IMG/VR virus record: IMGVR_UViG_3300017963_000192
Coordinates: 153,704 to 217,703 of that record
Length of the DNA: 64,000 nt
Strand: one strand, 5' to 3'
Both the position numbers and the translations under genes were made by a program. Below, piece by piece: positions 23,113-64,000 of this stretch. Numbering within the stretch: position 1 is the stretch's first letter; each line of letters opens with the position of its first letter. Under the pieces are notes generated by a model that made no database searches, was not told where the DNA came from, and saw nothing but the letters and a program-made list of their open reading frames with translations.

Positions 23113-23574
23113 ATGAATTTTGAACCGCCTGTTGGATATAGGGTGTTAATTATAAGGACTTTAGAAAGAGGTCACGAAATTAAGTATTATCAAGATGGGA
23201 AAGTATTTACATTAGAAAAAGCATTAGAAATAGTTAAGGTAGCAATCCCTATGTTAACTCCAAACAGAGAAGAGAAAAGACAAAACGGTAGACGTTTCAA
23301 AGAAGACGGTGAAGAAATGTTTACTTTAACTGCTCAAGATCAGCATGGAGTGATGGTTAAGGATGAAGCTATTCCTAAAAGAAGAATAAGAAGACTTACC
23401 CCTAAAGAATGTGAACGTTTGATGGGATTGGAAGATGATTGGACGAGATGGGGTATTGATGAAGATGGTAATGAATATGAAGTCTCGGATACACAACGCT
23501 ATCGGATGGCTGGAAATGGTGTTGTAGTAGACGTTGTAAGAGAGATTATAAGGAGATTGGTTAATGCAAGTTGA
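23113..23574 (+). CDS. C-terminal half of a C5-cytosine DNA methyltransferase (TRD plus motifs IX/X only)
   Basis: MFTLTAQDQHG, IRRLTPKECERLMG, QRYRMAGNGVVV; no FxGxG or PC motif. Confidence 0.75.
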   Translation: MNFEPPVGYRVLIIRTLERGHEIKYYQDGKVFTLEKALEIVKVAIPMLTPNREEKRQNGRRFKEDGEEMFTLTAQDQHGVMVKDEAIPKRRIRRLTPKECERLMGLEDDWTRWGIDEDGNEYEVSDTQRYRMAGNGVVVDVVREIIRRLVNAS

Positions 23575-26500
23575 AGAAATAAGAGCCATACCTCAAGGAA
23601 TCAGAACTCGACCTCAGATGTTGGACAAGGTTTTTGATAACAAGTTCTGTAAAAAATGTAAGCTCTATCAATGTGCAAAGAATCCTTATATAGAAGGAAG
23701 GGGCAATAAGAATGCTAAATTATTAATTATAGGTGAAGCTCCTGGAAAAAATGAAGATGAGATGGGACAAGTTTTTGTAGGAAGTTCTGGAAAGACTTTG
23801 CAGGAAAGGCTTAATAGATATGATATTGATTATTATATAACCAACGCTGTAAAATGTTTAGACGGTAAATCCTTAGTAAAAACAAAAGAAGGTAATAAGC
23901 GGATTAATTGGATAGTAAAAAACAAATGGGATGGTGAAGTTCTTTCTATTAATAAAGATGGTGAGTTTGTCTGGAAAAATATTTATGGTTGGCACAGAAG
24001 TCTCATTAATAATAGAGACATATATAAAATATCAATAATAGATGGTAAAAACAATCCAAATGGAAAACCTAACATTTTAGTAACAGAAGATCATATTATT
24101 ATTACTGAAAGAGGTGAGGTTTTAGCAAAAGATCTTGTTTCTGGAAAGGATAAAATTGCTACTGGAACTCCTTATTTTGGAGGACATAGATCAGAACAAT
24201 TAATTATTGGATCATTGATGGGGGATGCGTTTGTTTCAAATAGAAATTATTTAGAAGAAAGACATTCTCTGAAACAAAGAGAATACCTACTTTTAAAAAC
24301 CAAATTGTTGGAATATTGGAAACCCTCTATAAGTAAAGGAACTATTAGAAACAACAAAAAATCTTATTCTTATATTGGGTATAGGATTTCAAGTACATTA
24401 TTTTTTAAACAATTAAGGAAACAGTTTTATAAAAACGGGAAAAAAATTTTTCCCGAACATTATGTAAATAGATTAAATATTTTTGGACTAGCTATAATTT
24501 TTATGGATGATGGCTACGGTAGATATTATGATAATAATAAGCATTCGAGAAGTGAGGACACGTTTCAAGTTGAAATTGCATTAGGAAAGATTGATGAAAA
24601 ATCAGCCAAAAACATTGTGAACAGGTTTAAAGAATTAGGGTATGATGTATATGTTACAAATAAAGATATTTATAGATTAAGATTTAAATATAAAAAGGCT
24701 TATAAATTCTTAAAGGATATTGCAAAATATGTTCCCCATAGTATGAGGTATAAGTTGCCCGAATCTTTGAGAGATTATCCTTTTATGGAAAGTGCTTACA
24801 AACCAGAAAAAACAAAGACATACTATTCTGAAATAAATGTTTCAAAAGTGGATTATTCAAAATTATCTAATTCAAAATCGGTTTATTGTATTGATGTAAA
24901 AGATACTCATAACTTTGTAACACCTTCTGGAGTTGTTCATAATTGTAGACCTACAGATGCTCAATCTAAAAATAGAACTCCTAGACCTGTTGAGATTAAA
25001 TGTTGTCTTCCTTTTACAATGAAAATAATAGAAGAAATAAAGCCTAAAGTTATATTAACATTAGGAAGAATACCGATGTCTCAAATACTTGGATTGAATT
25101 TAAGTATGAAGATTATGAGAGGGCATACCTATTACCATCCAGAATTAAATGTTACAATAATTCCCACATACCACCCTGCATATTTAGGGAGAGTTAACGA
25201 TGCTTTATATTACAAACAATTCGAAAATGATTTATTAATTGCTAATAATTTAGCGTATGCTCCGGCAAAAAGAATATTACCACCGTCACCAATTTCTATG
25301 AAAGATCCAATAGAAATAAAGGAGTATTTAGAATCATTATTAAACGTTGATGCTATTGCAATAGACTTAGAAACAAGTGGGACTGATCATATTAATGATA
25401 AAATAACTGATATATCTTTTTGTGCTAAAGCTGGTGAGGGTGTTCACATATCTTGGGATGATATAATACCTCATTTTGAATTATTGAGTGAGGTAATGAT
25501 GTCAGATGCTGTTAAGGTTGGTCAGAACTTTACTTTTGATATAAAGTTTTTAAGAATGGCTGGAGTAGATGTTAACAATTATTCTTTTGATACCTTACTA
25601 GCAGAACATATGTTAACAATGAGTTATGAAAAGAAAGAAGTGAGTGGTTTGTATAAATTGAAGAACATGGCATGGAAAGGAACTCCTATGGGAGGTTACG
25701 AAGAAGTTCTTGGCTCTGGAGGAATCAAAAAAGCGGTTAAAAAGAAAGAGAAAAAGAAAGATGAAGATGTTTTTCAAGGAAATTTATTTGAAAATCCTAA
25801 TGAAAAAAAGAATGAAGAGCTAGAAAAATTTGCAAACGTTATAGATGTTATTAGAAAGAAAAAGTTAGAGGATTCTGGATTAGAACCTTTAGAATATTAT
25901 TCAGCAATGGATGCGGACGTTACATTTAGACTTTTTCAAAGACAGAAACCTTTGATTGATAAAGATTTCTCTTTTCCTTTTTATGAAATAGTAATGCCGT
26001 TATCATGGACATTAATGAGAGTAGAGGAAAATGGTATTAGGTTAAATTCGGATTATATGAATTCTATTAAGATTGATAATCTAGAAAATATGGAAAGATG
26101 TAAACAAGAATTATTTAATCTGGCAGGGAAAGAATTTAATTTAAACTCTACTGATGATTTAAAAGATTTAATATTTAATAAGTTAAAGATAACACCTAGT
26201 GATGAATTTAAAACCAAACCAAGCAAAACCTATCCTGATGGGCAGTACTCAACCGATGAAAAAGCAATAGCGTATTATAGCTCGAAAAATCCAGCATTGA
26301 ATTTTTTGATTGAATACAGAAAACTTTACAAAGAGAACTCTACTTATATAGACGGCTTTAAAAAATTTATGCAAGAAGATACTTGGAGAGTCCATCCTAA
26401 TTATTTACAACACTCAACTGCTACTGGAAGATTGAGTTGTATTTCGGAAGGGACGAAAATAACGATGGTTGGAGAAGAAAGAAATATAGAAAATGTTAAA

Positions 26501-29347
26501 GTTGGTGATTTAGTTTATTGTTATGATGAAAAAGGCGAATTGAAAATATCAAAAGTTACGAATGTTTTTAATAATGGCATTCAAGATTGTATTAAATTAA
26601 AATGGCAAAGTAGTGGTTCTGGAGATATTGGAGAATTAGTATTAACACCAAATCATTTAGTAAAACACAAATATAAAGGGTGGATTCGTGCTGATTCATT
26701 AAATCGATATGATAAGATTTTTCATTTAAGAAAGTCCTTACAGAAAAATGGTAGAATTAGATTATATGGGACTAACAAGTTTATGAAATTTGAGGAGCAA
26801 GTTATAAAGGAAGAATATTTTAAAGCTCCATCTAGTTTATTAATTCATCATAAAGATGAAAATCCGTCAAATAATAAAATTTCAAATTTTGAAATTTTAT
26901 CTAATTCAAAACATTCAAAATTACACTCTATAAAATTGGTAAAAGAGGGAAGAATTAAATGGGATCATTTAGATAAGTATAGAGATAAGATAAAACGAAG
27001 AACTGGTAAAAACCATTATTATTGGAAAGAATTTAATAAAGAAGATCTTATCCAAATGTTAGAAAATGCTAATGGAGTGATATCTAATTTAAAGATTGAC
27101 AAAGAAACATTTAGAAATAAATGCAAATTAGTTGGTTTTGATTATAAAAAATATAAATATTTTTATTCTAAAAAAGTTGGATATCTTGATGAGAAAAAAA
27201 TTGTTAATGTTTTATATAAATTTGAAAAAGAATCCAATTCATTTGATAAATGTGCAAGGTACTTAGGAATAGGTAGATCTAAACTTAAAGAGTTATGTGA
27301 CTATTACGGTATTTCTACAAATCATATGATTTTATCTGTAACACCTTTTGGAAAATGCAAAGTATATGATCTAGAAGTAGAAGAACACCACAATTTCATT
27401 GCTAATGAAATTTGTGTTCATAATTGTCTTTCCCCACCTATTCAAACCATCCCTAGAAAGAACAAGATTAGAAACATGATTGTTCCCAGAGATGGAGGAA
27501 AGCTTGTTGTTGCAGACTTATCTCAAATAGAATTAAGAATCTTGGCAATGATTAGTGGTGATCAAAGAATGATAAACGCTTTTGAAAGTGGTGTTGATTT
27601 TCATACTGCAACAGCTTGCAGTATGTTTAGAATAAATCCTAATGAATTTGATAAAAATAATTCTAAACATAATGAATTTAGAAGTGTTGCAAAATGTGTT
27701 CATCCATCATCTTTAATTATTTATAATCTTGAAATAAAAAGAATGTGTGATATTGTTAAGAATAGTAAAGAAGATTCTTTTGAAAAAATACAAGGACATA
27801 TTTGGAACGGTAAAAATATTGTTGATTTAAAAAACACATATAAATCTAACAAAGGTAAGAGAATATTAATTTCTGCTCACAAGTCTATTTTAGTGTGTTC
27901 TGAAAATCATCAAGTACAGTTAAAAGATGGTTCGTTAAAAAAGGCAAAAGATATTAAAGAGAAAGATGTTTTATGTGATGTATCCTTTCCTGATTTAGTG
28001 TCAATGCCACAAAGTATTAAGATAAATCCTTTTAATGGAGAAGATGAACAAGGATTAACATTATGGTTAGATGAAAAATGGGCATATTTAGCTGGCGTAT
28101 ATACAGGAGATGGGTGCTATGCTGAAAAACATATTAGTATTTCTACTGGAAGTGAAAGCAAACACGAAGATTGGAAGGATGTTTTAATAAAAGCTTTTGA
28201 TGATGTCGGAATTTATGCTAAAAAAAGAGATTCTCATTTTGATAAAAAAAGAAATAGAAATAGTAAAAGTAGTTCTGTGTACGTTGGTTCAACTAGAACA
28301 AGAAGATTTTTTGATAAACTTGAACTGACAAAAGAGGGTGAAGGAAAAACATTAAGAGTTCCTCTGTGGGTGTTAAATAATTATGATAATTGTTGGGCAT
28401 TCCTTGGTGGATTATTGGATACTGATGGAACAGTTACAACTGATCCATTAAGTAGAACATTGTCTATTACAACAAAGTCTTGGGAGTTAATGCAGGATTT
28501 AACAGTATTGTTAAACAGATTAGGAATTGAATACGGAATAGAAAATACTTTCAATAAAACATATAAAAGATATTATTTTAGAGTGCAGATTTATGCACGA
28601 AATACTGAAGAGATTTTTAATAGAAAGATAATGCGTTGTCCATACAAAGTTGAAAGATTAAAGAAAAAAGTAGAGACCCTTAAAAACAGAAGAAGATCTA
28701 ACCATAACAAAGATAATTTTGTTAAAAGAATTGAAGTATTAGATGAGGGAGATTTATTTGATATTGAAGTTGATTCTAAAGATCATCTTTATTGGGTAAA
28801 TGGTATAGTAACTCACAACACAATAAACTTCGGAATAGCTTACGGAAGAGGTGCTTATTCTATCGTTGTTGAGTTAAGAGACTTCTATGGTATTGATATT
28901 ACTCAAGATGAGGCAAGTAACTTTATTAACACTTTTTATGGGACGTATAAAGATGTTAAAAGATGGATGATAGAGACAGTTAATTTTGCAAGAACTTATG
29001 GATATGTTGAAACAATTTATGGTAGAAAGAGATTTTTACCTATGATACATAGTTCTAATACAGAAGATAAAGCGAAAGCAGAGAGACAGGCAGTTAATAC
29101 TATGATTCAATCTTCTGCATCAGACGTGAACAACATTGCACTTATTAGAATAGGGAAATGGTTGGACGATAGCAATAAAAAATCTATGCTAATCGGATGT
29201 GTTCACGATAGTATTTTAGTAGATAGCCCAGAGGATGAGGTTGAAGAAGTTTCTGAAAAACTTGTGGAGTGTATGACTAAAGATGTACCACGAATAACTA
29301 TTCCGCTTAAAGCGGATTTAGATATATTAGACAAATGGGAGAAATGA
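23564..29347 (+). CDS. polA: Family-4 uracil-DNA glycosylase fused to 3'-5' exonuclease/family A DNA polymerase, with three inteins
   Basis: CxxC, IGEAPG, FVG.SG, TNAVK|CRP, YHPAY (UDG); DLETSG, DADVT (exo); TATGRLS, ADLSQIELR, AK|TINFG, QAVNTMIQS, VHDS (PolA); about 860-aa extein. Confidence 0.93.
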   Translation: MQVEEIRAIPQGIRTRPQMLDKVFDNKFCKKCKLYQCAKNPYIEGRGNKNAKLLIIGEAPGKNEDEMGQVFVGSSGKTLQERLNRYDIDYYITNAVKCLDGKSLVKTKEGNKRINWIVKNKWDGEVLSINKDGEFVWKNIYGWHRSLINNRDIYKISIIDGKNNPNGKPNILVTEDHIIITERGEVLAKDLVSGKDKIATGTPYFGGHRSEQLIIGSLMGDAFVSNRNYLEERHSLKQREYLLLKTKLLEYWKPSISKGTIRNNKKSYSYIGYRISSTLFFKQLRKQFYKNGKKIFPEHYVNRLNIFGLAIIFMDDGYGRYYDNNKHSRSEDTFQVEIALGKIDEKSAKNIVNRFKELGYDVYVTNKDIYRLRFKYKKAYKFLKDIAKYVPHSMRYKLPESLRDYPFMESAYKPEKTKTYYSEINVSKVDYSKLSNSKSVYCIDVKDTHNFVTPSGVVHNCRPTDAQSKNRTPRPVEIKCCLPFTMKIIEEIKPKVILTLGRIPMSQILGLNLSMKIMRGHTYYHPELNVTIIPTYHPAYLGRVNDALYYKQFENDLLIANNLAYAPAKRILPPSPISMKDPIEIKEYLESLLNVDAIAIDLETSGTDHINDKITDISFCAKAGEGVHISWDDIIPHFELLSEVMMSDAVKVGQNFTFDIKFLRMAGVDVNNYSFDTLLAEHMLTMSYEKKEVSGLYKLKNMAWKGTPMGGYEEVLGSGGIKKAVKKKEKKKDEDVFQGNLFENPNEKKNEELEKFANVIDVIRKKKLEDSGLEPLEYYSAMDADVTFRLFQRQKPLIDKDFSFPFYEIVMPLSWTLMRVEENGIRLNSDYMNSIKIDNLENMERCKQELFNLAGKEFNLNSTDDLKDLIFNKLKITPSDEFKTKPSKTYPDGQYSTDEKAIAYYSSKNPALNFLIEYRKLYKENSTYIDGFKKFMQEDTWRVHPNYLQHSTATGRLSCISEGTKITMVGEERNIENVKVGDLVYCYDEKGELKISKVTNVFNNGIQDCIKLKWQSSGSGDIGELVLTPNHLVKHKYKGWIRADSLNRYDKIFHLRKSLQKNGRIRLYGTNKFMKFEEQVIKEEYFKAPSSLLIHHKDENPSNNKISNFEILSNSKHSKLHSIKLVKEGRIKWDHLDKYRDKIKRRTGKNHYYWKEFNKEDLIQMLENANGVISNLKIDKETFRNKCKLVGFDYKKYKYFYSKKVGYLDEKKIVNVLYKFEKESNSFDKCARYLGIGRSKLKELCDYYGISTNHMILSVTPFGKCKVYDLEVEEHHNFIANEICVHNCLSPPIQTIPRKNKIRNMIVPRDGGKLVVADLSQIELRILAMISGDQRMINAFESGVDFHTATACSMFRINPNEFDKNNSKHNEFRSVAKCVHPSSLIIYNLEIKRMCDIVKNSKEDSFEKIQGHIWNGKNIVDLKNTYKSNKGKRILISAHKSILVCSENHQVQLKDGSLKKAKDIKEKDVLCDVSFPDLVSMPQSIKINPFNGEDEQGLTLWLDEKWAYLAGVYTGDGCYAEKHISISTGSESKHEDWKDVLIKAFDDVGIYAKKRDSHFDKKRNRNSKSSSVYVGSTRTRRFFDKLELTKEGEGKTLRVPLWVLNNYDNCWAFLGGLLDTDGTVTTDPLSRTLSITTKSWELMQDLTVLLNRLGIEYGIENTFNKTYKRYYFRVQIYARNTEEIFNRKIMRCPYKVERLKKKVETLKNRRRSNHNKDNFVKRIEVLDEGDLFDIEVDSKDHLYWVNGIVTHNTINFGIAYGRGAYSIVVELRDFYGIDITQDEASNFINTFYGTYKDVKRWMIETVNFARTYGYVETIYGRKRFLPMIHSSNTEDKAKAERQAVNTMIQSSASDVNNIALIRIGKWLDDSNKKSMLIGCVHDSILVDSPEDEVEEVSEKLVECMTKDVPRITIPLKADLDILDKWEK
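23855..24943 (+). mobile_element. Intein pol-1 in the UDG domain (363 aa, LAGLIDADG)
   Basis: NAVK|CLDGKS...TEDH...GSLMGDA...FMDDG...FVTPSGVVHN|CRP. Confidence 0.9.
26438..27424 (+). mobile_element. Intein pol-2 (329 aa, HNH endonuclease)
   Basis: TGRLS|CISEGT...TPNH...IHHKDENPSNN...NFIANEICVHN|C. Confidence 0.9.
27695..28819 (+). mobile_element. Intein pol-3 in motif B (375 aa, LAGLIDADG)
   Basis: SVAK|CVHPSS...SENH...GVYTGDG...GLLDTDG...NGIVTHN|TINFG. Confidence 0.9.
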
Positions 29348-33557: not shown

Positions 33558-36092
33558 ATGGCGAATCCTTTAAAAGATATCGGAGGAATACCTGTAAATG
33601 AAGATAATGAAGCTTTAATCATTACCAATGCTATTAAGAACAAAAAGAACAGAGAAATATTTGTTCGACACATTGATTATAGGTTATTCAGAAGAAAAGA
33701 ATTTCAAACAATGGCGTTTGCTATTCAAGCTATTGAAACCTCAAATATGGAAATGAATACTGATGCTATTATTTTGAAATCTAAAACTTGTCCTATTAAA
33801 AAAATAGTTGATTTTGAATTTATAGAAACACTTAAAGAAAATTTTCCTGAAGTGCCGGAGTCAAATTTTATAGAACATCTTGTAACACTTCGTACTGATA
33901 GTGTCAAAGCTCAAGCATTTGATTTGGTTCATAAGTCTCTTATTAGATCCTTTATGAATCCTCAAGCTGGAATAAAGGATCTCGAAGTTAGGGTACAGGC
34001 ATTACAAGATTTAATAACATCTGGATACTCTTCAACAGAATGCCAGTTTCTTACTATGAAAGAGGCTGTAGCTGAATATGTATATGATAAAGAGCATGGG
34101 GTAAGGAGTAGAACTACTGGTTTCAGACAATTAGACGAAAAACTTATTCAAGGCTTGAAAGAGGAATGGATTTCAATTATTGCAGGTCTGGCGAACATGG
34201 GGAAGACACATACTTTAAACACTCCTATAATAATGTATGATGGGAGTATTAAAATGATTCAAGATATTGAAGTTGGGGATTTGTTGATGGGCGTTGATTC
34301 TCTGCCTAGAAAAGTTACTCGAACATGGACGGGTGTAGATGATATTTATACAATAAATCAATGTAAAGGGGATGCATATGAAGTAACTGGTCAACATTTA
34401 TTATCTTTAAAAAGAAGTTATAATCAATATTATAAACCAGATAAAAAATTACCTATCAATGAAAGAAGAATAACTCATCCAAAAGGAGAAGTTTTAAATA
34501 TATCTGTATTAGATTATTTAAAAAAAGGGAACGGGTGGAAGACTATGTGGAAAGGTTACAAATCAGAGGGATGGGAAATGCCTGAAAGAAAAGTTGAATT
34601 GTCTCCTTATTTTTTAGGAATCTGGTTATCTGATGGAAATAATGATAGTCAATTAATTACAAATCCTGACATTGAAGTTAGAAAATTTTTAAAAGATTAT
34701 GCTTCATCTTTTAATATGTATTATACCGAAAGACAAAAAAAAGATTCTGATTGTTATACTTGTGTTATAAAAAAACGTGGTGAAAATAAAAATATTATAA
34801 AAGATTATCTCGAAGATTATAATTTATTTAAAAATAAACACATTCCTGATGATTTTAAATATACTTCACGCAAGAAAAGAATGGAACTTTTAAGTGGTTT
34901 ATTAGATGGTGATGGTTATTTAACATACGTAACCTATGAAATTTCAACAAAATATGAACAATTAAAAGATGACATCTTATATTTAGCAAGAAGTTTGGGT
35001 TTTTATTCAGTAGCTAAATATGAAAAAAAGAAAATCAAATCAATTGGTTTTGAGGGTAAATATTGGCGTATAAGAATAGTAGGAGATACGTACCTAATAC
35101 CGTGTAAAGTTAAAAGAAAAAAAGCAAAAAAAATAAAAAGGAGAAAAAACTTTTTATTTACAGGATTTAATGTAAAATACAAAGGAAAAGACAAGTTTTA
35201 TAGTATTTCTCTGGAAGATACTACGGATCAATTGTATTTATTAGGAGATGGAACTGTAACCCATAATTCTTCCTTTGCTTTGTCTATGATGAATAATTTA
35301 TCAAACAAAGGAGTTCCTTCCGCAAATTTTGCATTAGAGATGCCTAATCAATCTATTATAACAAAGTTACTTGCTTTTAATACAAATCTTACTATTAGAA
35401 AGGTAGCTATTGAATGGGATAATTTAGATGTTATAGAAAAGAAAGTCTATGAACATGAACTTGAAAGACTTGCAAGAAATCAATACATATATTTGAATGA
35501 TAAACCATCACAAGGATTGTCAGATATTAAAGAACAGACTATGTTACTTCAAGATAAAATAGCAACTGTTGATAAATCTTTTGATGGATATATTGTAATA
35601 TTAATAGACTTGTTTGGGAAAATAAAAGAATTTCTTGGAAGTGATAACTTTGCTAGAGATTATGAGCAAAGATGTAATGAAGTTCAGGCTATGACACGGG
35701 AACTTGGTGTACATATGTGTTTAGTAGCACAAATAGTTAGATCAGTAATGCAACGTAAATTTAAACGACCTTCTCTAGCTGATATTAAAAATGCTGGTGC
35801 ATTAGGAGAGATTGCTGATTTAATTTTTGGTATTCACCGCCCAAATTATGACCCCGAAGTAGCACTCAAAAGTCAATTAGCATACGGACAAGGTAATGAA
35901 GAAATTGAACCAAATCCTGATGAGAATTTAGCAGAGATATTAATACTTAAAGGTAGAATGGCACAAGCCAATCAACTTGTAAACTTTTATTTTGATCCTA
36001 ATACAACACGGTTTAGTCCTATTGAGGAAGATTATCAGAATGAGCTAAACGCAACTAAATTCGATGATGATGATTGGGATAATCAATTTTGA
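33558..36092 (+). CDS. dnaB: Replicative DnaB helicase with one intein
   Basis: TTGFRQLD, IAGLANMGK|SS, FALEM, VAQI, RPSLADIK, ADLIFGIHR. Confidence 0.9.
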   Translation: MANPLKDIGGIPVNEDNEALIITNAIKNKKNREIFVRHIDYRLFRRKEFQTMAFAIQAIETSNMEMNTDAIILKSKTCPIKKIVDFEFIETLKENFPEVPESNFIEHLVTLRTDSVKAQAFDLVHKSLIRSFMNPQAGIKDLEVRVQALQDLITSGYSSTECQFLTMKEAVAEYVYDKEHGVRSRTTGFRQLDEKLIQGLKEEWISIIAGLANMGKTHTLNTPIIMYDGSIKMIQDIEVGDLLMGVDSLPRKVTRTWTGVDDIYTINQCKGDAYEVTGQHLLSLKRSYNQYYKPDKKLPINERRITHPKGEVLNISVLDYLKKGNGWKTMWKGYKSEGWEMPERKVELSPYFLGIWLSDGNNDSQLITNPDIEVRKFLKDYASSFNMYYTERQKKDSDCYTCVIKKRGENKNIIKDYLEDYNLFKNKHIPDDFKYTSRKKRMELLSGLLDGDGYLTYVTYEISTKYEQLKDDILYLARSLGFYSVAKYEKKKIKSIGFEGKYWRIRIVGDTYLIPCKVKRKKAKKIKRRKNFLFTGFNVKYKGKDKFYSISLEDTTDQLYLLGDGTVTHNSSFALSMMNNLSNKGVPSANFALEMPNQSIITKLLAFNTNLTIRKVAIEWDNLDVIEKKVYEHELERLARNQYIYLNDKPSQGLSDIKEQTMLLQDKIATVDKSFDGYIVILIDLFGKIKEFLGSDNFARDYEQRCNEVQAMTRELGVHMCLVAQIVRSVMQRKFKRPSLADIKNAGALGEIADLIFGIHRPNYDPEVALKSQLAYGQGNEEIEPNPDENLAEILILKGRMAQANQLVNFYFDPNTTRFSPIEEDYQNELNATKFDDDDWDNQF
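34206..35267 (+). mobile_element. Intein in DnaB Walker A (354 aa, LAGLIDADG, Thr at position 1)
   Basis: MGK|THTLNTPIIMYDG...TGQHLLSL...GLLDGDG...LGDGTVTHN|S. Confidence 0.88.
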
Positions 36093-42122: not shown

Positions 42123-42324
42123 AGAAGAACCTGTGAGGACTATTTCAACACATGTTCCTGCTCATATTTATAATGCATATTCGAATAAGGTGAAATTTTA
42201 CGAATTGAATTCTCATGATGTTATGGGTTATCTAGTTAAGAAATTTATAGAAGGAGATTTTGACGAAGACTTTTCAATACCAAAAGATTAAACCATATTA
42301 ATTAAATTAGCAGGAGGATATGAT

Positions 42325-42717
42325 ATGAAAATTAACAAAGTGTTTGTCTACGGTACCTTACGTAGAGGTCTTAGTAGAAATGGTGTCTTACAAAGAACTT
42401 CTGAATTCATTGGTGTAGGCACTTGTAAATACAAAAAGATGTTTGATTTAGGGAGTTTTCCAGCAGTTATTAACTCCGATGATGAAAAGGATGTAATTGT
42501 TGGAGAGCTTTACGAAATGCGCAATCCAGAAGAAGTTCTTTCAATACTCGATTCCATTGAAGGAGTTCCCCACCTTTATAGACGTGATTCAGTTAAAGTA
42601 AATATAGATGGAAAAGAAATTGACAGTTGGTTGTATATTTACAATACTGACAAAGAAAGATTGAAAGATTGTGAACACGTCAAATCTGGAGATTATTCAG
42701 ATAGACTATGGTTCTAA
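42325..42717 (+). CDS. Gamma-glutamylcyclotransferase (AIG2-like)
   Basis: VFVYGTLRRG, DLGSFPA, VGELY, LDSIEG, LYRR. Confidence 0.85.
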   Translation: MKINKVFVYGTLRRGLSRNGVLQRTSEFIGVGTCKYKKMFDLGSFPAVINSDDEKDVIVGELYEMRNPEEVLSILDSIEGVPHLYRRDSVKVNIDGKEIDSWLYIYNTDKERLKDCEHVKSGDYSDRLWF

Positions 42718-47749: not shown

Positions 47750-48181
47750 TTAATCCATTTCTGCAATATCTTCGTCTGTTATTTCTAAACAATCAATCTT
47801 ATCTCTACAATCCTCTAAAAAGATATGGAGGAAAGGAGCATTTATTCTAGGACTTAATCCTCTAACTAGAGTACTTCCTATATCATCTTTGTATTTCCAA
47901 ACAGGAATGTTAAACTTATTATATCCCCAACCATCATCAAATTTCTCAAAAATATGTATTATGAGTTTTTCGTCAACTCCACACCTATCAAATCCTTTAG
48001 GCATACCTAAAAAGAATTTACCAATAACAGGAAATCCCCTTGTACCTACAACGTGCTTACCTCAACTCATACACTTTTCATCGTGTTCATATTCTCCAAA
48101 GCAACCATCTTCAGTACTACTTCCACAAACACAACCAGGACATTGATATTTTTCTATTGCTTTCTTTATATCGTCTTTCAT
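47750..48181 (-). CDS. 143-codon Cys-rich protein with in-frame UGA at codon 40 (candidate selenoprotein, otherwise a pseudogene)
   Basis: AAGGAG RBS plus ATG at 48181; MKDDIKKAIEKYQCPGCVCG...GC...KCMS-TGA(48064-48062)-GKHVVGT continues in frame into the 47750..48004 ORF. Confidence 0.7.
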
Positions 48182-51325: not shown

Positions 51326-52123
51326 TTATCTATGACGAGAACTCCTAATAGCTTCCATAAGCAACCACAATTGTTTATTTAGCTTAACTTCTTGCTGAAT
51401 GTTATTAATAGTTCTTGTCTTTCTTTCTCTGTTTGCACTATCAGTATATTCAACGCCACCCTTTATTACATTTTCTTGAATGATATTAAATATTTTCCAG
51501 AGATTATCTTCTTTGTCTTCCTCTCTGCGAGGTTCTATCAACCTCATAGGCTCAATAGATTTATTATCTTCTCCAAATCTTAATAGATGAGCTGATTCCG
51601 CTAACCATTTCTTTTCATTGTTTGCGAGTTTAATTGTTTGGTACTCTTCAATCTTTGAGAAGATTTGTGAGAACCCACTTACGATTTCTGTAATAGCTTT
51701 TTCTATACTAATGAAATCAACGTTGATATGTTTCACAGAAAGATTGCCGAAGATTTCAACCGGAGTAATCAAACCATTTCCGCACACAAGTTCATTAATA
51801 GCAATGCTCATCATTACTCTGTATGATCTGTCGTGAGAACCAGTATAATGAAGCTCCGGTATCCTGTCTCCAACTTTTGTGTACTTTGCCTGGTCTGGCG
51901 TTCTGAAACGTATTGAGTGTTTTTGAAAACCCATATACTTTTCATCTCTCGGTATGCTTTGTTTAACTTCTGCGGGATACCAACCAAGCTTTTCCATATC
52001 ATCTATAATCTTATAGGTTGGTATGTATACATATTTGTCAGACACATCTTTTGCTGGACTCATAGCATAAACGCTAGGAGCTTTGGCTTTAATTTGTTCT
52101 TTGGTTAAAAAAGTATGTTCCAT
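51326..52123 (-). CDS. DUF932/DUF945-family protein (likely start MEHTFL)
   Basis: APSVYA, SDKYVYIPT, GFQKHSIRF, SHD, LVCGNGL, DNLWKIFNIIQEN, LNKQLW. Confidence 0.75.
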   Translation of the reverse strand: MEHTFLTKEQIKAKAPSVYAMSPAKDVSDKYVYIPTYKIIDDMEKLGWYPAEVKQSIPRDEKYMGFQKHSIRFRTPDQAKYTKVGDRIPELHYTGSHDRSYRVMMSIAINELVCGNGLITPVEIFGNLSVKHINVDFISIEKAITEIVSGFSQIFSKIEEYQTIKLANNEKKWLAESAHLLRFGEDNKSIEPMRLIEPRREEDKEDNLWKIFNIIQENVIKGGVEYTDSANRERKTRTINNIQQEVKLNKQLWLLMEAIRSSRHR

Positions 52124-52136
52124 ATTAATCCTCCTG

Positions 52137-52487
52137 CTAAGAATCAATTCTTAATGGTTTTGTAAATACATCAAGAAGTTTTTTTGCTTTACTTTTATCT
52201 TCTTTCTTTTTTACCTTTGCTTTTCTTGTCTTCCATTTCTTAGAATATGGTGTTACAAGATATCCATCTTTATGCATTTCTGCTTTATGTTCCCATATTA
52301 ATTGTTTAGTATCTGGTACTAATAATGTTTTGGGAGTGCCGTGTGTAGGTTTTCCTTTCTCGTCTACCCTTCTATAAAGAAAAGGACCTTTATCGCCTCT
52401 TGTTTTTATTGCGAAGGTTGTTCTTTCCTCTCTTCGAAATTTATCATAGTATTTAATTTTAACATATTCCATATTACTACCCCTCAA
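52137..52487 (-). CDS. Basic hypothetical protein
   Basis: ORF in operon. Confidence 0.5.
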   Translation of the reverse strand: MRGSNMEYVKIKYYDKFRREERTTFAIKTRGDKGPFLYRRVDEKGKPTHGTPKTLLVPDTKQLIWEHKAEMHKDGYLVTPYSKKWKTRKAKVKKKEDKSKAKKLLDVFTKPLRIDS

Positions 52488-54363: not shown

Positions 54364-54972
54364 CTACTCCTTTACAATCTTTAAACTTACAATATTCTCT
54401 AACTTGAAACCTAATTGTAAAATTTCTATTTCTTGAAGACCCGTAGAGGTTTGCCTATTATAGGATTCATATCCTTTCTTTGCACTTTCTTGAAGGTAAG
54501 GTTCTATTTCTTCATAGTCAACAACACTCTTTCCAGCTTTGTCTGTGGTATACTCAACACCAATTTTAATTCGATCTTTACGAATAGCAAATCGAACATA
54601 TTCGTCTCCACTATCATCTTCCTTTTTGTTGTAAAGCATTCCACGAATCTTCTCATACCCAGATTCCTTAAAACCTGTACTACCATCATTCTTTTTTTCT
54701 GTGTCTGGATATAATATAAGACCGCCTTCTTCTGTACACTGTCTGAAATATCCTCTCTCATCATAAACAAGTGTATAGATTGTGTGTTTGTAAGCTTTTT
54801 TAGAAGGATTAGAGCCGCCTTCTTTCATTTTAGGAAGTTCTTCTTTAGAAACCCCCTGTTTTTTCAGATAGTTCCTTTTATTGAGGACTTTCGCATCACT
54901 ACGATACTTTAATTCGAATTTCGTTCCGTTAGTTATACCTAACGCATTTTCCCTAATAATCTCCTGTTTCAT
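54364..54972 (-). CDS. Hypothetical protein with its own strong promoter
   Basis: TTAGCAGGAGG RBS; 202 aa. Confidence 0.6.
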   Translation of the reverse strand: MKQEIIRENALGITNGTKFELKYRSDAKVLNKRNYLKKQGVSKEELPKMKEGGSNPSKKAYKHTIYTLVYDERGYFRQCTEEGGLILYPDTEKKNDGSTGFKESGYEKIRGMLYNKKEDDSGDEYVRFAIRKDRIKIGVEYTTDKAGKSVVDYEEIEPYLQESAKKGYESYNRQTSTGLQEIEILQLGFKLENIVSLKIVKE

Positions 54973-55005
54973 CCTAAACCTCCTGCTAAAAAGTAAATTG
55001 AATGA

Positions 55006-55052
55006 TAACTAATGTATACATTCAATATACATTAGTTACTCGAAATTGTCAA
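55006..55052 (-). promoter_or_regulatory. sigma70 promoter overlapped by a 13-bp inverted repeat
   Basis: TTGACA-N17-TATATT on the - strand; TAACTAATGTATA-N7-TATACATTAGTTA. Confidence 0.75.
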
Positions 55053-55428: not shown

Positions 55429-55707
55429 TTTTTACTCCTCCTTTAGAATGGTATGTCTCCATCATAAAATGGATTTGGTATAAGTTCTCCATTTTCCATT
55501 TTCATATACTTTCTGCTTCCTTTCCTAGCCTCTCGGATACGAGACGCAACCAATTCTGCTATATCTGGATTAGTTTTTAAGATGTCTATAATTTCGTCTA
55601 CGGATGCAACTTCTAGCTGAACAATTATATCACTGATGAATTTTTGTATAGCATCTTTTAAATCTTTACTAAATCTCATAGTTATCTCCTATAAATAAAA
55701 TAAGTAA

Positions 55708-55738: not shown

Positions 55739-56593
55739 TTATTCATAGTAATAAATCAAAGGTGCTACAAAATTGTCTGGAACACCAACTACCGCACCGT
55801 TGTCAGTAACATACTCCAACTTTCGTACTGTTATATTATTCACTGTTTGTGTAGTACATCCGTTTTCATTTGAAAAACTTGAGAATGTCATAACACTTTG
55901 GGTTATGTTGTCGTCAAGCTGGAAGTATTTACCATTATCAACATTCTTTAACAATCTTTTTCTACTGGCTGAATGTGTATTTACATTAACGTATGCAACG
56001 TTTCCACTACAATCAAAATTAGTGTAGAAGATATTATCTGTATAAAAAGATATTTCTCCAGCGTTGCTTTTAACAGCATAAAAGTACCCTTCTGGTGAAA
56101 GAATGTAATCGGTGTCTATAGACGTACCTAAAAATTCTCCAAGTACTACTCCATTACCATCCTTAACTTTCAACGTTTTGTTATGAACAAGAATCTCCCA
56201 ACTGTCTCCATCCCAAATATATGCTGTACTATTATCCGTGTTATAATAAGCATCGTTTAAATTTGGGCTACTTGGGATACTTTCATTATCGAAGTATCCA
56301 AGCCAATTAATGGAAATGCCATCCGTACCATCCGTACCATCTGTACCATTTAAGTTAATGGTATGATAATCTGTTCCATCACAATACTGAAACTCTTGCA
56401 AATCTATAATATAATATAGAAATCCATCCGTTTCGTTATTGCAAGTTGGAAGATCATCTGCTGTAAGAATAACCCTTGCGGGATTTCCGCTTACGTCTTT
56501 ACCTGAAGAAATAATTTCCCCTTCTTCAGGAGCTTCAGCACATCCCATTAGTGCAACAGCAACCAGTGTTAGAATAATAAATGTTTGTTTCAT
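55739..56593 (-). CDS. Lipoprotein with short collagen-like GTD repeat
   Basis: Lipobox ALMG-C; NGTDGTDGTDG; DAYYNT...YIWDG. Confidence 0.7.
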   Translation of the reverse strand: MKQTFIILTLVAVALMGCAEAPEEGEIISSGKDVSGNPARVILTADDLPTCNNETDGFLYYIIDLQEFQYCDGTDYHTINLNGTDGTDGTDGISINWLGYFDNESIPSSPNLNDAYYNTDNSTAYIWDGDSWEILVHNKTLKVKDGNGVVLGEFLGTSIDTDYILSPEGYFYAVKSNAGEISFYTDNIFYTNFDCSGNVAYVNVNTHSASRKRLLKNVDNGKYFQLDDNITQSVMTFSSFSNENGCTTQTVNNITVRKLEYVTDNGAVVGVPDNFVAPLIYYYE

Positions 56594-56674
56594 CTTTTCC
56601 TCCTGCTAAATTTGTTTTGATTCTAACTAAACTATTACTACCTCCTTATCAAATTTTTCTTTGTTTCCCTCCTT

Positions 56675-57723: not shown

Positions 57724-58174
57724 CTTTTACCTCCTATGGTCCAAACAACAATTTAAAAAACGGTCCGAAGAGTGGTATTATTAAATATTCAAACACAAGA
57801 AGTGCTGAAATGATAGTGCCTAGTATATATCCAATTATACCATAAGGCATAGTGCTTCCAACAAGATACCAGAATTGGTGCCTTCTTACTAAGCCTCTTC
57901 TCTCGCTAGAGTCCCTCTCGTAGTGATGACCGACGTTTTTTAAGTATCTTTCTTTGTTCATATTTAACCTCCTACTAAAACGCTTACTATACAGAAAAGA
58001 ACATAAAAAACAAAAAGTATTACTGGCAGTACAAATAATATAAAAAAGAATACATATATTATTGATACAGAAGAAAGAAATCCTCCGACTGCCATCCAGA
58101 AACCAGCTTTTCTTCTTTTATCTTCAAGTGTTGGCTCATGATAATCAATTCTCATCATTTGTTTGCCTCCTTTA

Positions 58175-58705
58175 TTAATGTTCTGTTCCCCTGTCTTTAA
58201 TTCCTGCGGGGTCAATTACTTCTAAATATATTCCAAGTCCACTTATAATATCATTATAAGGTAACTTTAAGAAATCAATGATTTCTATAAACATTTTTAT
58301 TATCATTGAATTAGGTACGCTTACGTTAGCAATTAATGGGGTTATCGAAATAAATAAAGACAATGCTTTGTGTATTGGATTATCGTTATCTATTACTTGA
58401 ACAAATCCTGAGATAGAAAGTAAACTTTCCTTTATTATTTTAGGACTTCCTCCAATATTCAAATCCTTTTGAACTCTATCCATCATAAAATTATCAAAAG
58501 AAATCTCAAGAGTTTTATCCAAAATAGAAAAGACAAACAAAGAAAAGTAATCTTGTTTGTTTTCCATAGTAAGATTCTCAAAAGTTTCTCCCACTTTTTC
58601 AAAACCTTCTTCTCTAAGAGTTTTATTCAAACTATCAAGAAAGCTTTTGTAATCTTTATCATTTAAATTCAATGCTTCAAATAAAGTTTCTTTTTTGTGA
58701 TCCAT
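58175..58705 (-). CDS. Hypothetical protein
   Basis: GAGG RBS; 176 aa. Confidence 0.5.
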   Translation of the reverse strand: MDHKKETLFEALNLNDKDYKSFLDSLNKTLREEGFEKVGETFENLTMENKQDYFSLFVFSILDKTLEISFDNFMMDRVQKDLNIGGSPKIIKESLLSISGFVQVIDNDNPIHKALSLFISITPLIANVSVPNSMIIKMFIEIIDFLKLPYNDIISGLGIYLEVIDPAGIKDRGTEH

Positions 58706-58910
58706 TAGTTTACCTCACTATTCCTATCGTTTGATTCTTTAAATGCCTTTAGCTCTTTTTCAACAGCATCAGTAAAAATTCTGCTGTTGTAACCCATAAT
58801 TAATTGATTCTTTTCTTTAATCATCTTCTTGTACTCATCATACAAGTTATCGTCTACGCTAACTTTTATAACCATTTTAATTCCTCCGAAATATAAACTC
58901 ACTCTATTAT

Positions 58911-58939
58911 AATATAACTAAATTTCCCTTTTTTGTCAA
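58911..58939 (-). promoter_or_regulatory. sigma70 promoter
   Basis: TTGACA-N17-TATATT on the - strand. Confidence 0.7.
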
Positions 58940-59013
58940 CAAAAATTCCCCAAAAAGTACCTAAAAATTCCTCAAAAAGGGAATTTTATTACCTTGAAAT
59001 TTTAAATTTTTAG

Positions 59014-59042
59014 TTGACTTTTGTGACATAACTATTTAAATT
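59014..59042 (+). promoter_or_regulatory. Divergent sigma70-like promoter facing an ORF-less structured region
   Basis: TTGACT-N17-TAAATT. Confidence 0.5.
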
Positions 59043-59046
59043 GTAA

Positions 59047-59212
59047 AAAAGATATAAAAACGTAGTCACACCTATGTTTCTACTCCGATATCTTTTATAC
59101 ACACAAAGTAACTATCTTTAAACCTCCTGCTAAAAACAGTTTAAAGATAAAAGACGGAACAAAGCCTTTTCCTCGCCAGAGTATGTCCAAGGAAAAGGCT
59201 TTTCTTTTATTT
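59047..59212 (+). ncRNA. Candidate three-hairpin small RNA with an anti-SD loop
   Basis: Stems 59047-55/59088-96, 59113-23/59139-49 (loop CTCCTGCTAAAAACA) and 59161-73/59190-202 plus U-rich tail; no ORF. Confidence 0.5.
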
Positions 59213-59234
59213 ATCTCGGATACGAGATAGATAA

Positions 59235-59576
59235 TTATATTTTAGGCAATCTCCCACAACCTTCAAGTTTTGAAATATCAACTCCCTTGTAACGCATTTT
59301 TTTAACGAATTCTTCTTCACAGGTTTTACTACAAGCGTAACCTTCACTATACTCATCTGAAATATGTATAGTGTCAATTGCTTTATGTTCCTTCTTACAA
59401 ACATTACATCTTACAATTTCAGCATCCCAGTATTGACATACATTTCCTACATAATCTTCAACAGCATCACAACCCTCAATCATTGGCGGTTCTCCTGGTT
59501 CCCATTGTGTATCGGGATAACCTTTTGTTCTATGATTTACAGAGTGTTTGCAGTTCCAACAAGATTTGTTATTCAT
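59235..59576 (-). CDS. Cys-rich hypothetical protein
   Basis: CWNC, GC...CQYW, CNVC, CSKTC; GGAGG RBS. Confidence 0.55.
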   Translation of the reverse strand: MNNKSCWNCKHSVNHRTKGYPDTQWEPGEPPMIEGCDAVEDYVGNVCQYWDAEIVRCNVCKKEHKAIDTIHISDEYSEGYACSKTCEEEFVKKMRYKGVDISKLEGCGRLPKI

Positions 59577-60612: not shown

Positions 60613-60735
60613 ATCTATACCTCCTTGAAATATTATTTGTTCTGGTTTTATTTAAAAAACATTTAACGCTCTTTATATTATTTCTTAACTCACCAATATC
60701 ATCTACATAATCAATTACTAAATCAAAGCAAGAAT

Positions 60736-63742: not shown

Positions 63743-63957
63743 AATTAACCTCCTTGAAATATTACCTGTTTTGGTTTTATTTAAATACACATTAAAGCTC
63801 TGAAACTTTTATCTACCTATAGTATCGACACCTCTACCATTTTACTTTAGTACTTTTTTGTTTACTTTAATACTTTTTTGTGACCAACAATATATTTATA
63901 TAAACATAAAACTACTATGTGTACATAACCCCTATTTTTGACATTTGCGAATAACGA

Positions 63958-64000
63958 CGCCTAAACCTTCGCCTAAACCTTCGCCTAAACCTTCGCCTAA
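63958..64000. repeat. 12-bp tandem repeat (CGCCTAAACCTT)n running off the window end
   Basis: Three perfect copies plus a partial fourth. Confidence 0.9.

What the first reader, a model, noticed from the sequence alone, without database searches (positions are those of the whole stretch)
59014..59212. Candidate trans-acting sRNA presenting an anti-Shine-Dalgarno loop matched to a phage gene subset
Seen: a + strand promoter (TTGACT-17-TAAATT) fires into about 160 nt with no ORF, against the flow of all neighbouring genes. The region folds into three hairpins and ends in a terminator-like stem with a U tract. Hairpin 2 has a perfect 11-bp stem, TATCTTTAAAC/GTTTAAAGATA, whose loop carries (C)CUCCUGCUAAAAA. 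This is complementary to the extended RBS TTAGCAGGAGG found before four genes: 42307 (GGCT), 52130 (DUF932), 56599 (lipoprotein) and 54975, where the match is 18 nt (TAAACCTCCTGCTAAAAA). On the - strand this copy of the RBS has no start codon behind it. Inference: a phage sRNA that silences translation of an RBS-defined regulon, or a - strand GGA-loop decoy for CsrA/RsmA-type proteins.
Basis: partly seen in the sequence, partly recalled or inferred. Interest (0 to 1): 0.7.

Follow-up and report, generated by a model that had tools for sequence, protein, structure and literature searches.

The report
Predicted phage small RNA, anti-ribosome-site loop
A gene-free gap in an uncultured 218-kb phage genome looks like a small RNA gene whose exposed loop can pair with an unusual ribosome-binding sequence shared by six to eight of the phage's own genes, but no RNA data or related phages exist to prove it.

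Summary
The window is the last 64 kb of a 217.7-kb metagenomic jumbo-phage record.

**The candidate RNA**
- The locus is a 355-nt gap between two - strand genes.
- The + strand has a TTGACT-17-TAAATT promoter. This pattern class has 16 genome copies, 11 of them intergenic, and a chance copy here has P about 0.007.
- About 160 nt without an ORF follow, then two hairpins whose U tracts lie only on the + strand.
- The central perfect 11-bp hairpin exposes CUCCUGCUAAAAACA (P unpaired 0.89).

**The matching ribosome sites**
- TTAGCAGGAGG occurs seven times in the genome: six are ribosome sites of ATG genes and the seventh is this locus.
- TTAGC is by far the commonest 5-mer before AGGAGG.
- The loop region also matches one start region over 18 nt and a ParB-like gene's start region over 15-17 nt.

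**Verdict**
- Most likely (about 0.45) this is a new phage-encoded trans-acting sRNA that masks ribosome sites.
- The - strand reads as a complete ribosome site with ATA in place of ATG, so a dead gene start or a - strand decoy stays possible.
- No transcript evidence and no diverged homologues could be found.
- The CsrA-decoy idea is not supported.

The parts
59014..59042 (+). Predicted sigma-70/sigma-A-type promoter TTGACT-17-TAAATT with an A/T-rich upstream tract. The predicted transcript start is near 59049.
   Evidence: The pattern class has 16 genome copies, 11 of them intergenic. Chance of a + strand copy in this gap is 0.007.
59049..59212 (+). Predicted non-coding RNA of about 160 nt (about 195 nt if it reads through to the second hairpin).
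   Evidence: No ORF. MFE -36.3 kcal/mol, z = -4.8. For the body without the terminator, z = -3.3 on + against -1.7 on -. No Rfam family matches.
59058..59079 (+). 5' hairpin of 8 bp. It includes one G-U pair, which would be a C-A mismatch on the - strand.
59084..59158 (+). Long bipartite hairpin. The outer helix pairs 59084-59095 with 59150-59158. It has a 17-nt internal loop and the apical perfect 11-bp stem 59113-59123 / 59139-59149.
59124..59138 (+). Apical loop CUCCUGCUAAAAACA. Together with the closing C at 59123 it is the anti-Shine-Dalgarno / anti-TTAGC seed.
   Evidence: Mean P(unpaired) 0.89. Complementary to UUUUUAGCAGGAGG.
59161..59212 (+). Intrinsic terminator: a 13-bp stem, AAAGCCTTTTCCT paired with AGGAAAAGGCTTT, then TTTTCTTTTATTT. 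On the - strand the tail is only TTTGTTCCG.
   Evidence: Only the + strand passes the U-tract filter in the genome-wide scan.
59207..59244 (+). Second terminator-like hairpin, TTATTTATCTCG-GATA-CGAGATAGATAA plus TTATATTTTA, acting as a back-up terminator. Its apex is a copy of the genome-wide repeated 14-mer TCTCGGATACGAGA.
59113..59136 (-). - strand reading of the same DNA: TTTTTAGCAGGAGGTTTAAAGATA. This is a complete RBS plus spacer with ATA where a start codon would sit, followed by a 6-codon frame.
   Evidence: Identical over 18 nt to the start region at 54975-54992. Identical over 15 nt to the ParB-like gene's AGGAGGTTTAAAGATG.
58911..58939 (-). Divergent strong promoter TTGACA-17-TATATT for the downstream 57-aa gene (58705-58878) and the genes after it.
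   Evidence: 11 of 12 match.
58941..58988 (.). Operator-like repeats between the two promoters. AAAAATTCC(C/T)CAAAAAG occurs twice, spaced 22 nt apart, and there are inverted AAATTCCC / GGGAATTT copies.
54975..54992 (-). Best predicted target: start region of the 202-aa gene (54364-54972). It has 18 contiguous base pairs with the RNA and its own TTGACA-17-TATATT promoter at 55024.
   Evidence: Duplex energy -30 kcal/mol.
56599..56609 (-). Predicted target: RBS TTAGCAGGAGG of the 284-aa lipobox protein (55739-56593).
52130..52140 (-). Predicted target: RBS TTAGCAGGAGG of the DUF932 gene (51326-52123).
42307..42317 (+). Predicted target: RBS TTAGCAGGAGG of the GGACT / gamma-glutamyl cyclotransferase gene (42325-42717).
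57968..57981 (-). Possible target: RBS GTTTTAGTAGGAGG of the 75-aa gene (57734-57961). Its one difference from the tag is G-U compatible.

Best explanation
The gap most likely holds a gene for a phage-encoded, trans-acting small RNA of about 160 nt, transcribed on the + strand against the surrounding - strand genes.

Proposed mechanism, with each step marked:
1. A host-type promoter (59014-59042) starts the RNA near 59049 (inferred).
2. The RNA folds into a 5' hairpin, a long hairpin and a terminator hairpin with a U tail. The long hairpin's 15-nt apical loop is CUCCUGCUAAAAACA. A second hairpin backs up termination (fold computed; termination inferred).
3. The exposed loop pairs with the RBS tag UUAGCAGGAGG carried by six phage mRNAs: GGACT, DUF932, a lipobox protein, a DnaB_2-like protein and two unknowns (complementarity shown).
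4. Pairing can extend into the stem. It reaches 18 bp with the 54975 start region, and 15-17 bp with the ParB-like gene's start region, where it runs into the AUG (complementarity shown).
5. Covering the Shine-Dalgarno sequence keeps 30S subunits off, lowering translation of this gene set and possibly triggering duplex cleavage (inferred from how known RBS-masking sRNAs work).
6. The divergent strong promoter and the repeats between the two promoters suggest that both are controlled together (inferred).
For: - Promoter: TTGAC[AT]-N16-18-TANANT has 16 genome copies, 11 of them intergenic against 9% non-coding DNA. This copy has the same A/T-rich upstream tract as the others. A chance + strand copy in this gap has P = 0.007.
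- Terminators: two tandem hairpins have U tracts on the + strand only, in a block where every gene is on the - strand.
- Position: on the - strand the RBS-like sequence begins 12 nt after the terminator hairpin with no room for a promoter. That is odd for a gene start but is the normal 3' layout of an sRNA.
- Fold: z = -4.8 for the whole RNA. For the body, z = -3.3 on + against -1.7 on -. The loop's P(unpaired) is 0.89.
- Coding: no ORF on either strand.
- RBS tag: TTAGCAGGAGG has 7 copies, 6 of them true RBSs. TTAGC precedes 6 of about 39 AGGAGG sites and is the top 5-mer. The family is tight, with only one near variant.
- Recognition mode: the six start regions share no secondary structure, so the tag is read as linear sequence.
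- Genome-wide rank: among all places outside gene starts, on both strands, this + strand RNA has the most start regions with 11 nt or more of perfect complementarity (8; next best 4).
- Duplex energies: loop-region duplexes are -20 to -30 kcal/mol, against -10.8 for a generic AAAGGAGG site.
- Hairpin: the perfect 11-bp stem is far beyond chance.
Against: - There is no expression evidence. No RNA run could be listed.
- There are no diverged homologues, so no conservation or covariation. All other copies are 100% identical contigs of the same phage.
- The - strand sequence is a complete start region with ATA in place of ATG. Hairpins that hold the SD in their loop occur at several real gene starts in this phage. 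The element could therefore derive from, or still be, a - strand feature.
- The count of shared 11-mers (8) is only slightly above that of real members of the TTAGCAGGAGG family (5-7).
- Whole-RNA cofold energies do not separate the proposed targets from background. The best is -18.2, the tagged targets reach -17.6, and a reversed-sequence control reaches -15.8.
- Half of the longer pairings lie in the stem and would need it to open.
- Host and chaperone are unknown.
Confidence: 0.45

Rival explanations
1. Relic of a - strand gene start. A gene that once began at AGGAGG-7 nt-ATG, inside a regulatory hairpin, was lost. Only its start region remains, and the + strand promoter is fortuitous.
For: - The - strand reads TTTTTAGCAGGAGGTTTAAAGATA. 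It is identical over 18 nt to a real start region and over 15 nt to the ParB-like gene's AGGAGGTTTAAAGATG, differing exactly at the third base of the start codon.
- Hairpins with the SD in the loop exist at real genes: genome 16751 with a 13-bp stem, and five others.
- This 355-nt gap is unusually long for the block.
Against: - The ATA pairs perfectly with TAT in the other arm. An ATG-to-ATA decay would have needed a compensating change, which implies the stem is still under selection.
- No decayed ORF or similarity follows it.
- It lies 12 nt after a hairpin terminator with no - strand promoter in between.
- A chance + strand promoter has P of about 0.007. Two + strand-only U tracts would also have to be coincidence.
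Confidence: 0.2
2. The + strand RNA is made but works mainly in cis. It would act as an antisense RNA or insulator against read-through from the upstream - strand operon, by transcriptional interference or by cleavage of the perfect duplex. The match to ribosome sites would be secondary.
For: - The - strand has no good U tract after the 113-aa gene, so read-through into the gap is plausible.
- The + strand RNA is fully complementary to any such read-through transcript.
- The downstream gene has its own strong promoter.
- Energy ranking of trans targets is weak.
Against: This does not explain why the apical loop carries the exact tag shared by six ribosome sites, nor the 18-nt and 15-nt identities.
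Confidence: 0.12
3. A functional - strand mimic of a translation start. The hairpin would present an RBS without a start codon and act as a decoy or operator for ribosomes or for a tag-specific translational regulator, or as an SD-like mRNA stabiliser.
For: - The - strand carries a perfect SD in an accessible loop.
- The tag family implies some specific trans factor, which could be a protein.
- SD-like 5' stabilisers without start codons are known from Bacillus cryIIIA and phage SP82 (my own knowledge, not checked here).
Against: - No convincing - strand promoter lies upstream within the gap; the best is TTGAAG-16-TAAAAT at 9 of 12.
- The next gene's promoter lies downstream of the element, so the element is not in that gene's 5' UTR.
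- The fold z-score is weaker on the - strand.
- The six real tagged start regions share no hairpin, which argues against a structure-specific protein operator.
Confidence: 0.1
4. A - strand GGA-loop decoy for CsrA/RsmA-type proteins.
For: The loop holds CAGGAGG, which includes the A(N)GGA core.
Against: - There is a single GGA hairpin, whereas CsrB/RsmZ-type sponges carry many.
- Any AGGAGG ribosome site contains the core motif.
- No CsrA homologue is in the phage record, while the control genomes score.
- No Rfam CsrB/Rsm family matches.
Confidence: 0.02

Closest known systems
c4 antisense RNA of phages P1 and P7
   Same: A phage-encoded small RNA whose loop sequences pair with a phage mRNA around the ribosome binding site and block translation. 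Its function depends on the complementary bases lying in loops (review PMC12197685, section 7).
   Different: By my own knowledge, c4 is processed from the same operon transcript as its target and controls one gene (icd/ant). This candidate has its own promoter and terminator, lies on the opposite strand to its neighbours, and matches six to eight dispersed genes. There is no sequence similarity.
Trans-acting phage sRNAs such as VpdS (VP882) and PreS (lambda)
   Same: Small RNAs encoded in phage genomes that base-pair with mRNAs in trans to tune the infection (PMC12197685).
   Different: Those are Hfq-dependent RNAs of Gram-negative hosts and were shown experimentally. VpdS and PreS act on host mRNAs, and VpdS on phage mRNAs as well. 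Here the predicted targets are phage genes sharing one RBS tag, the host is unknown, and nothing has been shown experimentally.
C-rich-loop sRNAs of Firmicutes (RsaE/RoxS, RNAIII, SprD)
   Same: By my own knowledge, their hairpin loops carry C/U-rich anti-SD motifs that mask G-rich ribosome sites of several mRNAs. They have standalone promoters and intrinsic terminators.
   Different: No Rfam match to any of them. This candidate has a single seed loop with a specificity extension (GCUAAAAA) beyond the anti-SD, rather than repeated UCCC motifs.
SD-like 5' mRNA stabilisers (cryIIIA STAB-SD, phage SP82)
   Same: A Shine-Dalgarno-like sequence without a start codon, in a phage or AT-rich Firmicute-like setting (my own knowledge).
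   Different: Those must sit near the 5' end of the mRNA they stabilise. Here the next gene's promoter lies downstream of the element.

Membership tests
Trans-encoded base-pairing sRNA that masks ribosome sites | Own promoter and intrinsic terminator bounding a short non-coding unit | tested here: met
   Promoter class and chance estimate. + strand-only U-tract terminators. No ORF. All are sequence predictions only.
Trans-encoded base-pairing sRNA that masks ribosome sites | Discrete small transcript detected | not testable with these tools
   No RNA run could be listed. The DNA runs hold only identical contigs.
Trans-encoded base-pairing sRNA that masks ribosome sites | Accessible seed complementary to target translation start regions | tested here: met
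   Loop P(unpaired) 0.89 and duplexes of -20 to -30 kcal/mol. Contiguous pairs of 11-18 nt with 8 start regions.
Trans-encoded base-pairing sRNA that masks ribosome sites | Conservation or covariation of structure and seed in relatives | not testable with these tools
   No diverged homologue found.
Trans-encoded base-pairing sRNA that masks ribosome sites | Target ranking by interaction energy stands out from background | tested here: inconclusive
   Cofold ddG for the tagged targets is -16.8 to -17.6, against a control minimum of -15.8. The unrestricted duplexfold ranking was noisy.
P1/P7 c4-type antisense RNA | Encoded in and processed from the same transcript as its target | tested here: not met
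   The candidate lies on the opposite strand to all neighbouring genes and has its own promoter.
CsrB/RsmZ-type protein sponge | Multiple GGA-loop hairpins, and a CsrA/RsmA partner | tested here: not met
   One GGA hairpin only. No CsrA in the phage record. No Rfam hit. The host's CsrA could not be tested.
STAB-SD-type 5' mRNA stabiliser | SD-like element near the 5' end of the transcript of the gene it stabilises | tested here: not met
   The downstream gene's strong promoter (58911-58939) lies downstream of the element. Only a 9 of 12 promoter-like site lies upstream of it.
Any curated Rfam family | Covariance-model score at or above the gathering threshold | tested here: not met
   No hit at gathering thresholds. 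The best sub-threshold hits have E of 0.3 or more.

The most novel reading that the evidence does not exclude
A jumbo phage may use one small RNA as an 'address reader'. A five-base tag (UUAGC) fused to the Shine-Dalgarno sequence would mark a dispersed set of phage genes: ParB-like, DnaB_2-like, DUF932, GGACT, a lipoprotein and others. A single anti-start-region loop would then switch their translation off together. That would be a phage-internal regulon defined by an RBS tag and read by an sRNA, possibly evolved from an inverted copy of a gene start.
Probability: 0.3. Interest if true: 0.7.

Novelty: new member of a known kind. Interest (0 to 1): 0.5.

Why it matters
Few sRNAs of virulent or jumbo phages have known targets, and most characterised phage sRNAs come from temperate phages of enterobacteria and vibrios (PMC12197685).

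If this one is real, it would show a phage co-ordinating its own partition, replication and accessory genes after transcription, through a short sequence tag attached to the ribosome site. The case would be unusually clean, because the target set can be read directly from the genome.

It would also give a simple, portable design: a tag plus an anti-tag hairpin for switching off translation of several genes at once.

If it is only a relic, it still documents a tight RBS family (TTAGCAGGAGG) in this phage that needs its own explanation.

Tried and rejected
**Searches for known families or relatives**
- Rfam at permissive and at gathering thresholds: nothing.
- blastn of the gap against 50,697 phage records: no match.
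- Flanking proteins (113 aa and 176 aa) in the 5.8-billion-protein collection: only themselves.
- A full HMMER search of the 113-aa protein gave 10 distant homologues. The three looked up lie on short contigs, or on one with no DNA held, and none has a comparable gap.
- The search for related loci with the 176-aa protein and with the sliding-clamp-like protein in viral contigs: no relatives.
- Pattern scans for TTTTTAGCAGGAGG in viral contigs, and for the 18-mer in viral and metagenome contigs, gave more than 200 hits. These are chance coding matches or unrelated ribosome sites. Only the phage's own contigs carry the hairpin.

**Expression and population data**
- Sequencing runs: three DNA runs, and no RNA run could be listed.
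- Laying the DNA contigs showed no variants in the gap.

**Computations that did not help**
- The unrestricted duplexfold ranking was dominated by A/T-rich pairing and was discarded.
- The first random-segment control was confounded by low-complexity 11-mers and by the antisense of real ribosome sites. I redid it with a GC filter and with gene starts masked.

**Ideas considered and dropped**
- The host 16S 3' tail explains TTAGC. Dropped because only 6 of about 39 AGGAGG sites carry it, as a discrete class rather than a graded preference.
- Small peptides on the + strand (two 15-codon ATG frames). Neither has an SD.
- A 6-codon ATA-started frame on the - strand. Nothing supports it beyond the spacing.

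Full report
**Context**

The window is the last 64 kb of a 217,703-bp IMG/VR virus record (G000:C1:153704-217703). The record is 31% G+C, CheckV estimates it 88% complete, and its ends are classed as linear. The same sequence is found in sediment and seawater metagenome runs.

It is a jumbo phage. PHROGs finds ribonucleotide reductase, DNA polymerase, a sliding-clamp-like protein, a UvsX-like recombinase, a DnaB-like helicase and a large terminase on the + strand arm.

Genes run on the - strand from about 1 to 145 kb, on the + strand from 145 to 200 kb, and on the - strand again from 200 to 217.7 kb. The finding lies in that last block. It occupies a 355-nt gap between a 113-aa Cys-rich protein (59235-59576, -) and a 57-aa protein (58705-58878, -). 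An independent JGI gene call on an identical 71.7-kb contig also leaves the gap empty and puts all neighbours on one strand.

TTGACT-17-TAAATT sits at 59014-59042. As a generic 9-of-12 match it is unremarkable: the tool finds 12 such sites in 2 kb against 9.5 expected.

This phage, however, plainly uses host-type promoters. The pattern TTGAC[AT]-N16-18-TANANT occurs 16 times in the genome, and 11 of those are intergenic although only 9% of the genome is non-coding. The intergenic copies, this one included, share an A/T-rich tract upstream of the -35. Dinucleotide shuffles of the gap produce a + strand copy in 0.7% of trials.

The + strand RNA from about 59049 folds into:
- a 5' hairpin (59058-59079);
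- a long bipartite hairpin (59084-59158), whose apical part is the perfect 11-bp stem 59113-59123 / 59139-59149 with a 15-nt loop;
- a 13-bp terminator stem (59161-59202) followed by TTTTCTTTTATTT.

The MFE is -36.3 kcal/mol and z = -4.8. A second hairpin (59207-59234) with a TTATATTTTA tail follows.

In a genome-wide scan both hairpins pass a U-tract filter on the + strand only, whereas many other intergenic terminators in this phage are bidirectional. Perfect inverted repeats of 11 bp or more are rare: about 20 distinct intergenic ones, most of them terminators, against 0-5 in shuffled genomes.

**The RBS tag is real and tight**

TTAGCAGGAGG occurs seven times. Six copies lie 5-8 nt before the ATG of a gene and the seventh is the locus. 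TTAGC is the commonest 5-mer before AGGAGG, at 6 of about 39 sites with no other 5-mer above 2.

Within three mismatches of the 14-mer there is essentially one further RBS, GTTTTAGTAGGAGG at 57968. Its single difference from the tag is G-U compatible.

The tagged genes are:
- a GGACT cyclotransferase and a DUF932 protein (Pfam);
- a lipobox protein and a 202-aa unknown;
- outside the window, a DnaB_2-like protein and a phrog_4652 protein.

The six start regions share no secondary structure. The tag is therefore a linear signal, which suits recognition by base pairing.

The tag is a discrete class rather than a graded preference. That argues against the host 16S tail as its partner.

**The loop region is the outlier in the genome**

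I counted start regions with 11 nt or more of perfect complementarity (at least 4 G/C) to every 54-nt stretch outside gene starts, on both strands. The + strand RNA here scores 8 and the next best places score 4.

Besides the six tagged sites it matches:
- the 54975 start region over 18 nt;
- the start region of the ParB-like gene, the first gene of the + strand arm, over 15 nt, or 17 with G-U, running into the AUG.

The loop is predicted open (P unpaired 0.89). Local duplexes are -20 to -30 kcal/mol, against -10.8 for a generic site.

**Which strand matters**

Evidence for the + strand:
- the promoter;
- the two + strand-only U tracts;
- the better z-score of the RNA body, -3.3 with 0 of 200 shuffles as good, against -1.7 with 14 of 200 on the - strand;
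- the layout of seed hairpin followed by terminator.

On the - strand the RBS-like sequence starts 12 nt after the terminator hairpin, with no room for a promoter. The next gene has its own 11-of-12 promoter further downstream.

Evidence for the - strand:
- The sequence TTTTTAGCAGGAGGTTTAAAGATA is a complete start region. It equals the ParB-like gene's AGGAGGTTTAAAGATG except ATA for ATG.
- Hairpins that hold the SD in the loop occur at several real genes here.
- The locus shares 11-mers with 8 start regions, only slightly more than real members of the family, which share with 5-7.

So the DNA may descend from a gene start. A plain relic does not explain the perfect stem, because ATA pairs with TAT in the other arm. 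Nor does it explain the promoter or the + strand U tracts.

**Limits**

- No RNA run could be listed.
- All other copies of the gap are 100% identical.
- The flanking proteins are orphans or have non-syntenic distant homologues.
- Motif scans of viral and metagenome contigs gave only chance matches.
- Whole-RNA cofold energies rank the proposed targets near the top but barely beyond a reversed-sequence control, -17.6 against -15.8.
- The case rests on seed complementarity and gene-like architecture, not on thermodynamic ranking.

**Comparison with known systems**

It would work like RBS-masking sRNAs. The nearest phage example is the c4 RNA of P1 and P7, whose loops pair around the ant ribosome site (PMC12197685). 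Among bacteria the nearest are the C-rich-loop sRNAs of Firmicutes (my own knowledge).

It is not a member of any curated family. It fails the c4 criterion of being encoded with its target, the CsrB/RsmZ criteria (one GGA hairpin, no CsrA), and the STAB-SD criterion of position.

**Verdict**

This is a well-formed but unverified candidate for a new phage sRNA.
- Probability that a + strand RNA acting on tagged ribosome sites exists: about 0.45.
- Relic: about 0.2.
- Cis-antisense role: about 0.12.
- - strand decoy: about 0.1.
- CsrA decoy: about 0.02.

Noticed in passing
window 59214-59227 and 55531-55544; genome 7187, 25822, 137629 and 147833, with near copies at 47809, 62858 and 86155: The 12-mer CTCGGATACGAG (14-mer TCTCGGATACGAGA) occurs 6 times exactly, against about 0.004 expected from composition. 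Copies lie in three intergenic places and in coding DNA, in different reading frames and both orientations. It is therefore a nucleotide-level motif of unknown function. One copy forms the apex of the second terminator-like hairpin at the locus.
   Followed up: partly
L123:72-200 (genome 72-200, outside the window): A second orphan unit on the + strand, facing - strand genes. It has TTGACA-17-TAAAAT, then about 95 nt of G+C-rich structured sequence with no ORF, ending in the terminator GCCGCAC..GTGCGGC plus TTATT. No Rfam match. It may be another small RNA.
   Followed up: partly
window 55006-55038; genome 126132, 130926, 171013 and 190949: Five TTGAC[AT]-17-TATATT/TACATT promoters share an operator-like palindrome (AATGTATAYATT..AATGTATAC) over the -10 and start site. 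This suggests one repressor controls a promoter set, including the promoter of the best predicted sRNA target.
   Followed up: no
window 58919-58988: AAAAATTCC(C/T)CAAAAAG occurs twice, 22 nt apart, just upstream of the -35 of the strong - strand promoter. Inverted AAATTCCC/GGGAATTT copies lie there too, one inside the promoter spacer. These are candidate regulator sites between the two divergent promoters.
   Followed up: no
L227:650-700 (genome 145950-146000): The start region of the ParB-like gene (Pfam ParB_N, E = 1.6e-20) is AGGAGGTTTAAAGATG, identical to the - strand of the locus except for the last base. A weaker version of the same hairpin (TTAAAC...GTTTAA) encloses its SD.
   Followed up: yes
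genome 16751-16784; also 17774, 25060, 97313, 113302 and 159083: Several real gene starts sit in hairpins with the Shine-Dalgarno sequence in the loop. The one at 16751 has a perfect 13-bp stem with the ATG in the 3' arm.
   Followed up: partly
window 63950-64000; L167:5344-9773: The record ends in CGCCTAAACCTT tandem repeats. A 77-kb contig from a sister sample is identical up to that end and runs 4.4 kb further, so the record is incomplete at this end. The flanking proteins are also recorded on a 234.7-kb contig.
   Followed up: partly
window 6060-11870, 23564-29347 and 33558-36092: The ribonucleotide reductase (1936 aa), DNA polymerase (1927 aa) and DnaB-like helicase (844 aa) are very long. 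They also hit HNH/LAGLIDADG endonuclease and 'terminase' PHROGs internally, which suggests inteins or homing-endonuclease insertions.
   Followed up: no
window 58857-58885: Logan contigs of both full-coverage DNA runs break here with a 29-nt overlap, just inside the start of the 57-aa gene. A 38-nt stretch (60619-60656) also appears twice in the 5.1-kb contig. These are assembly-graph branches of unknown cause.
   Followed up: no
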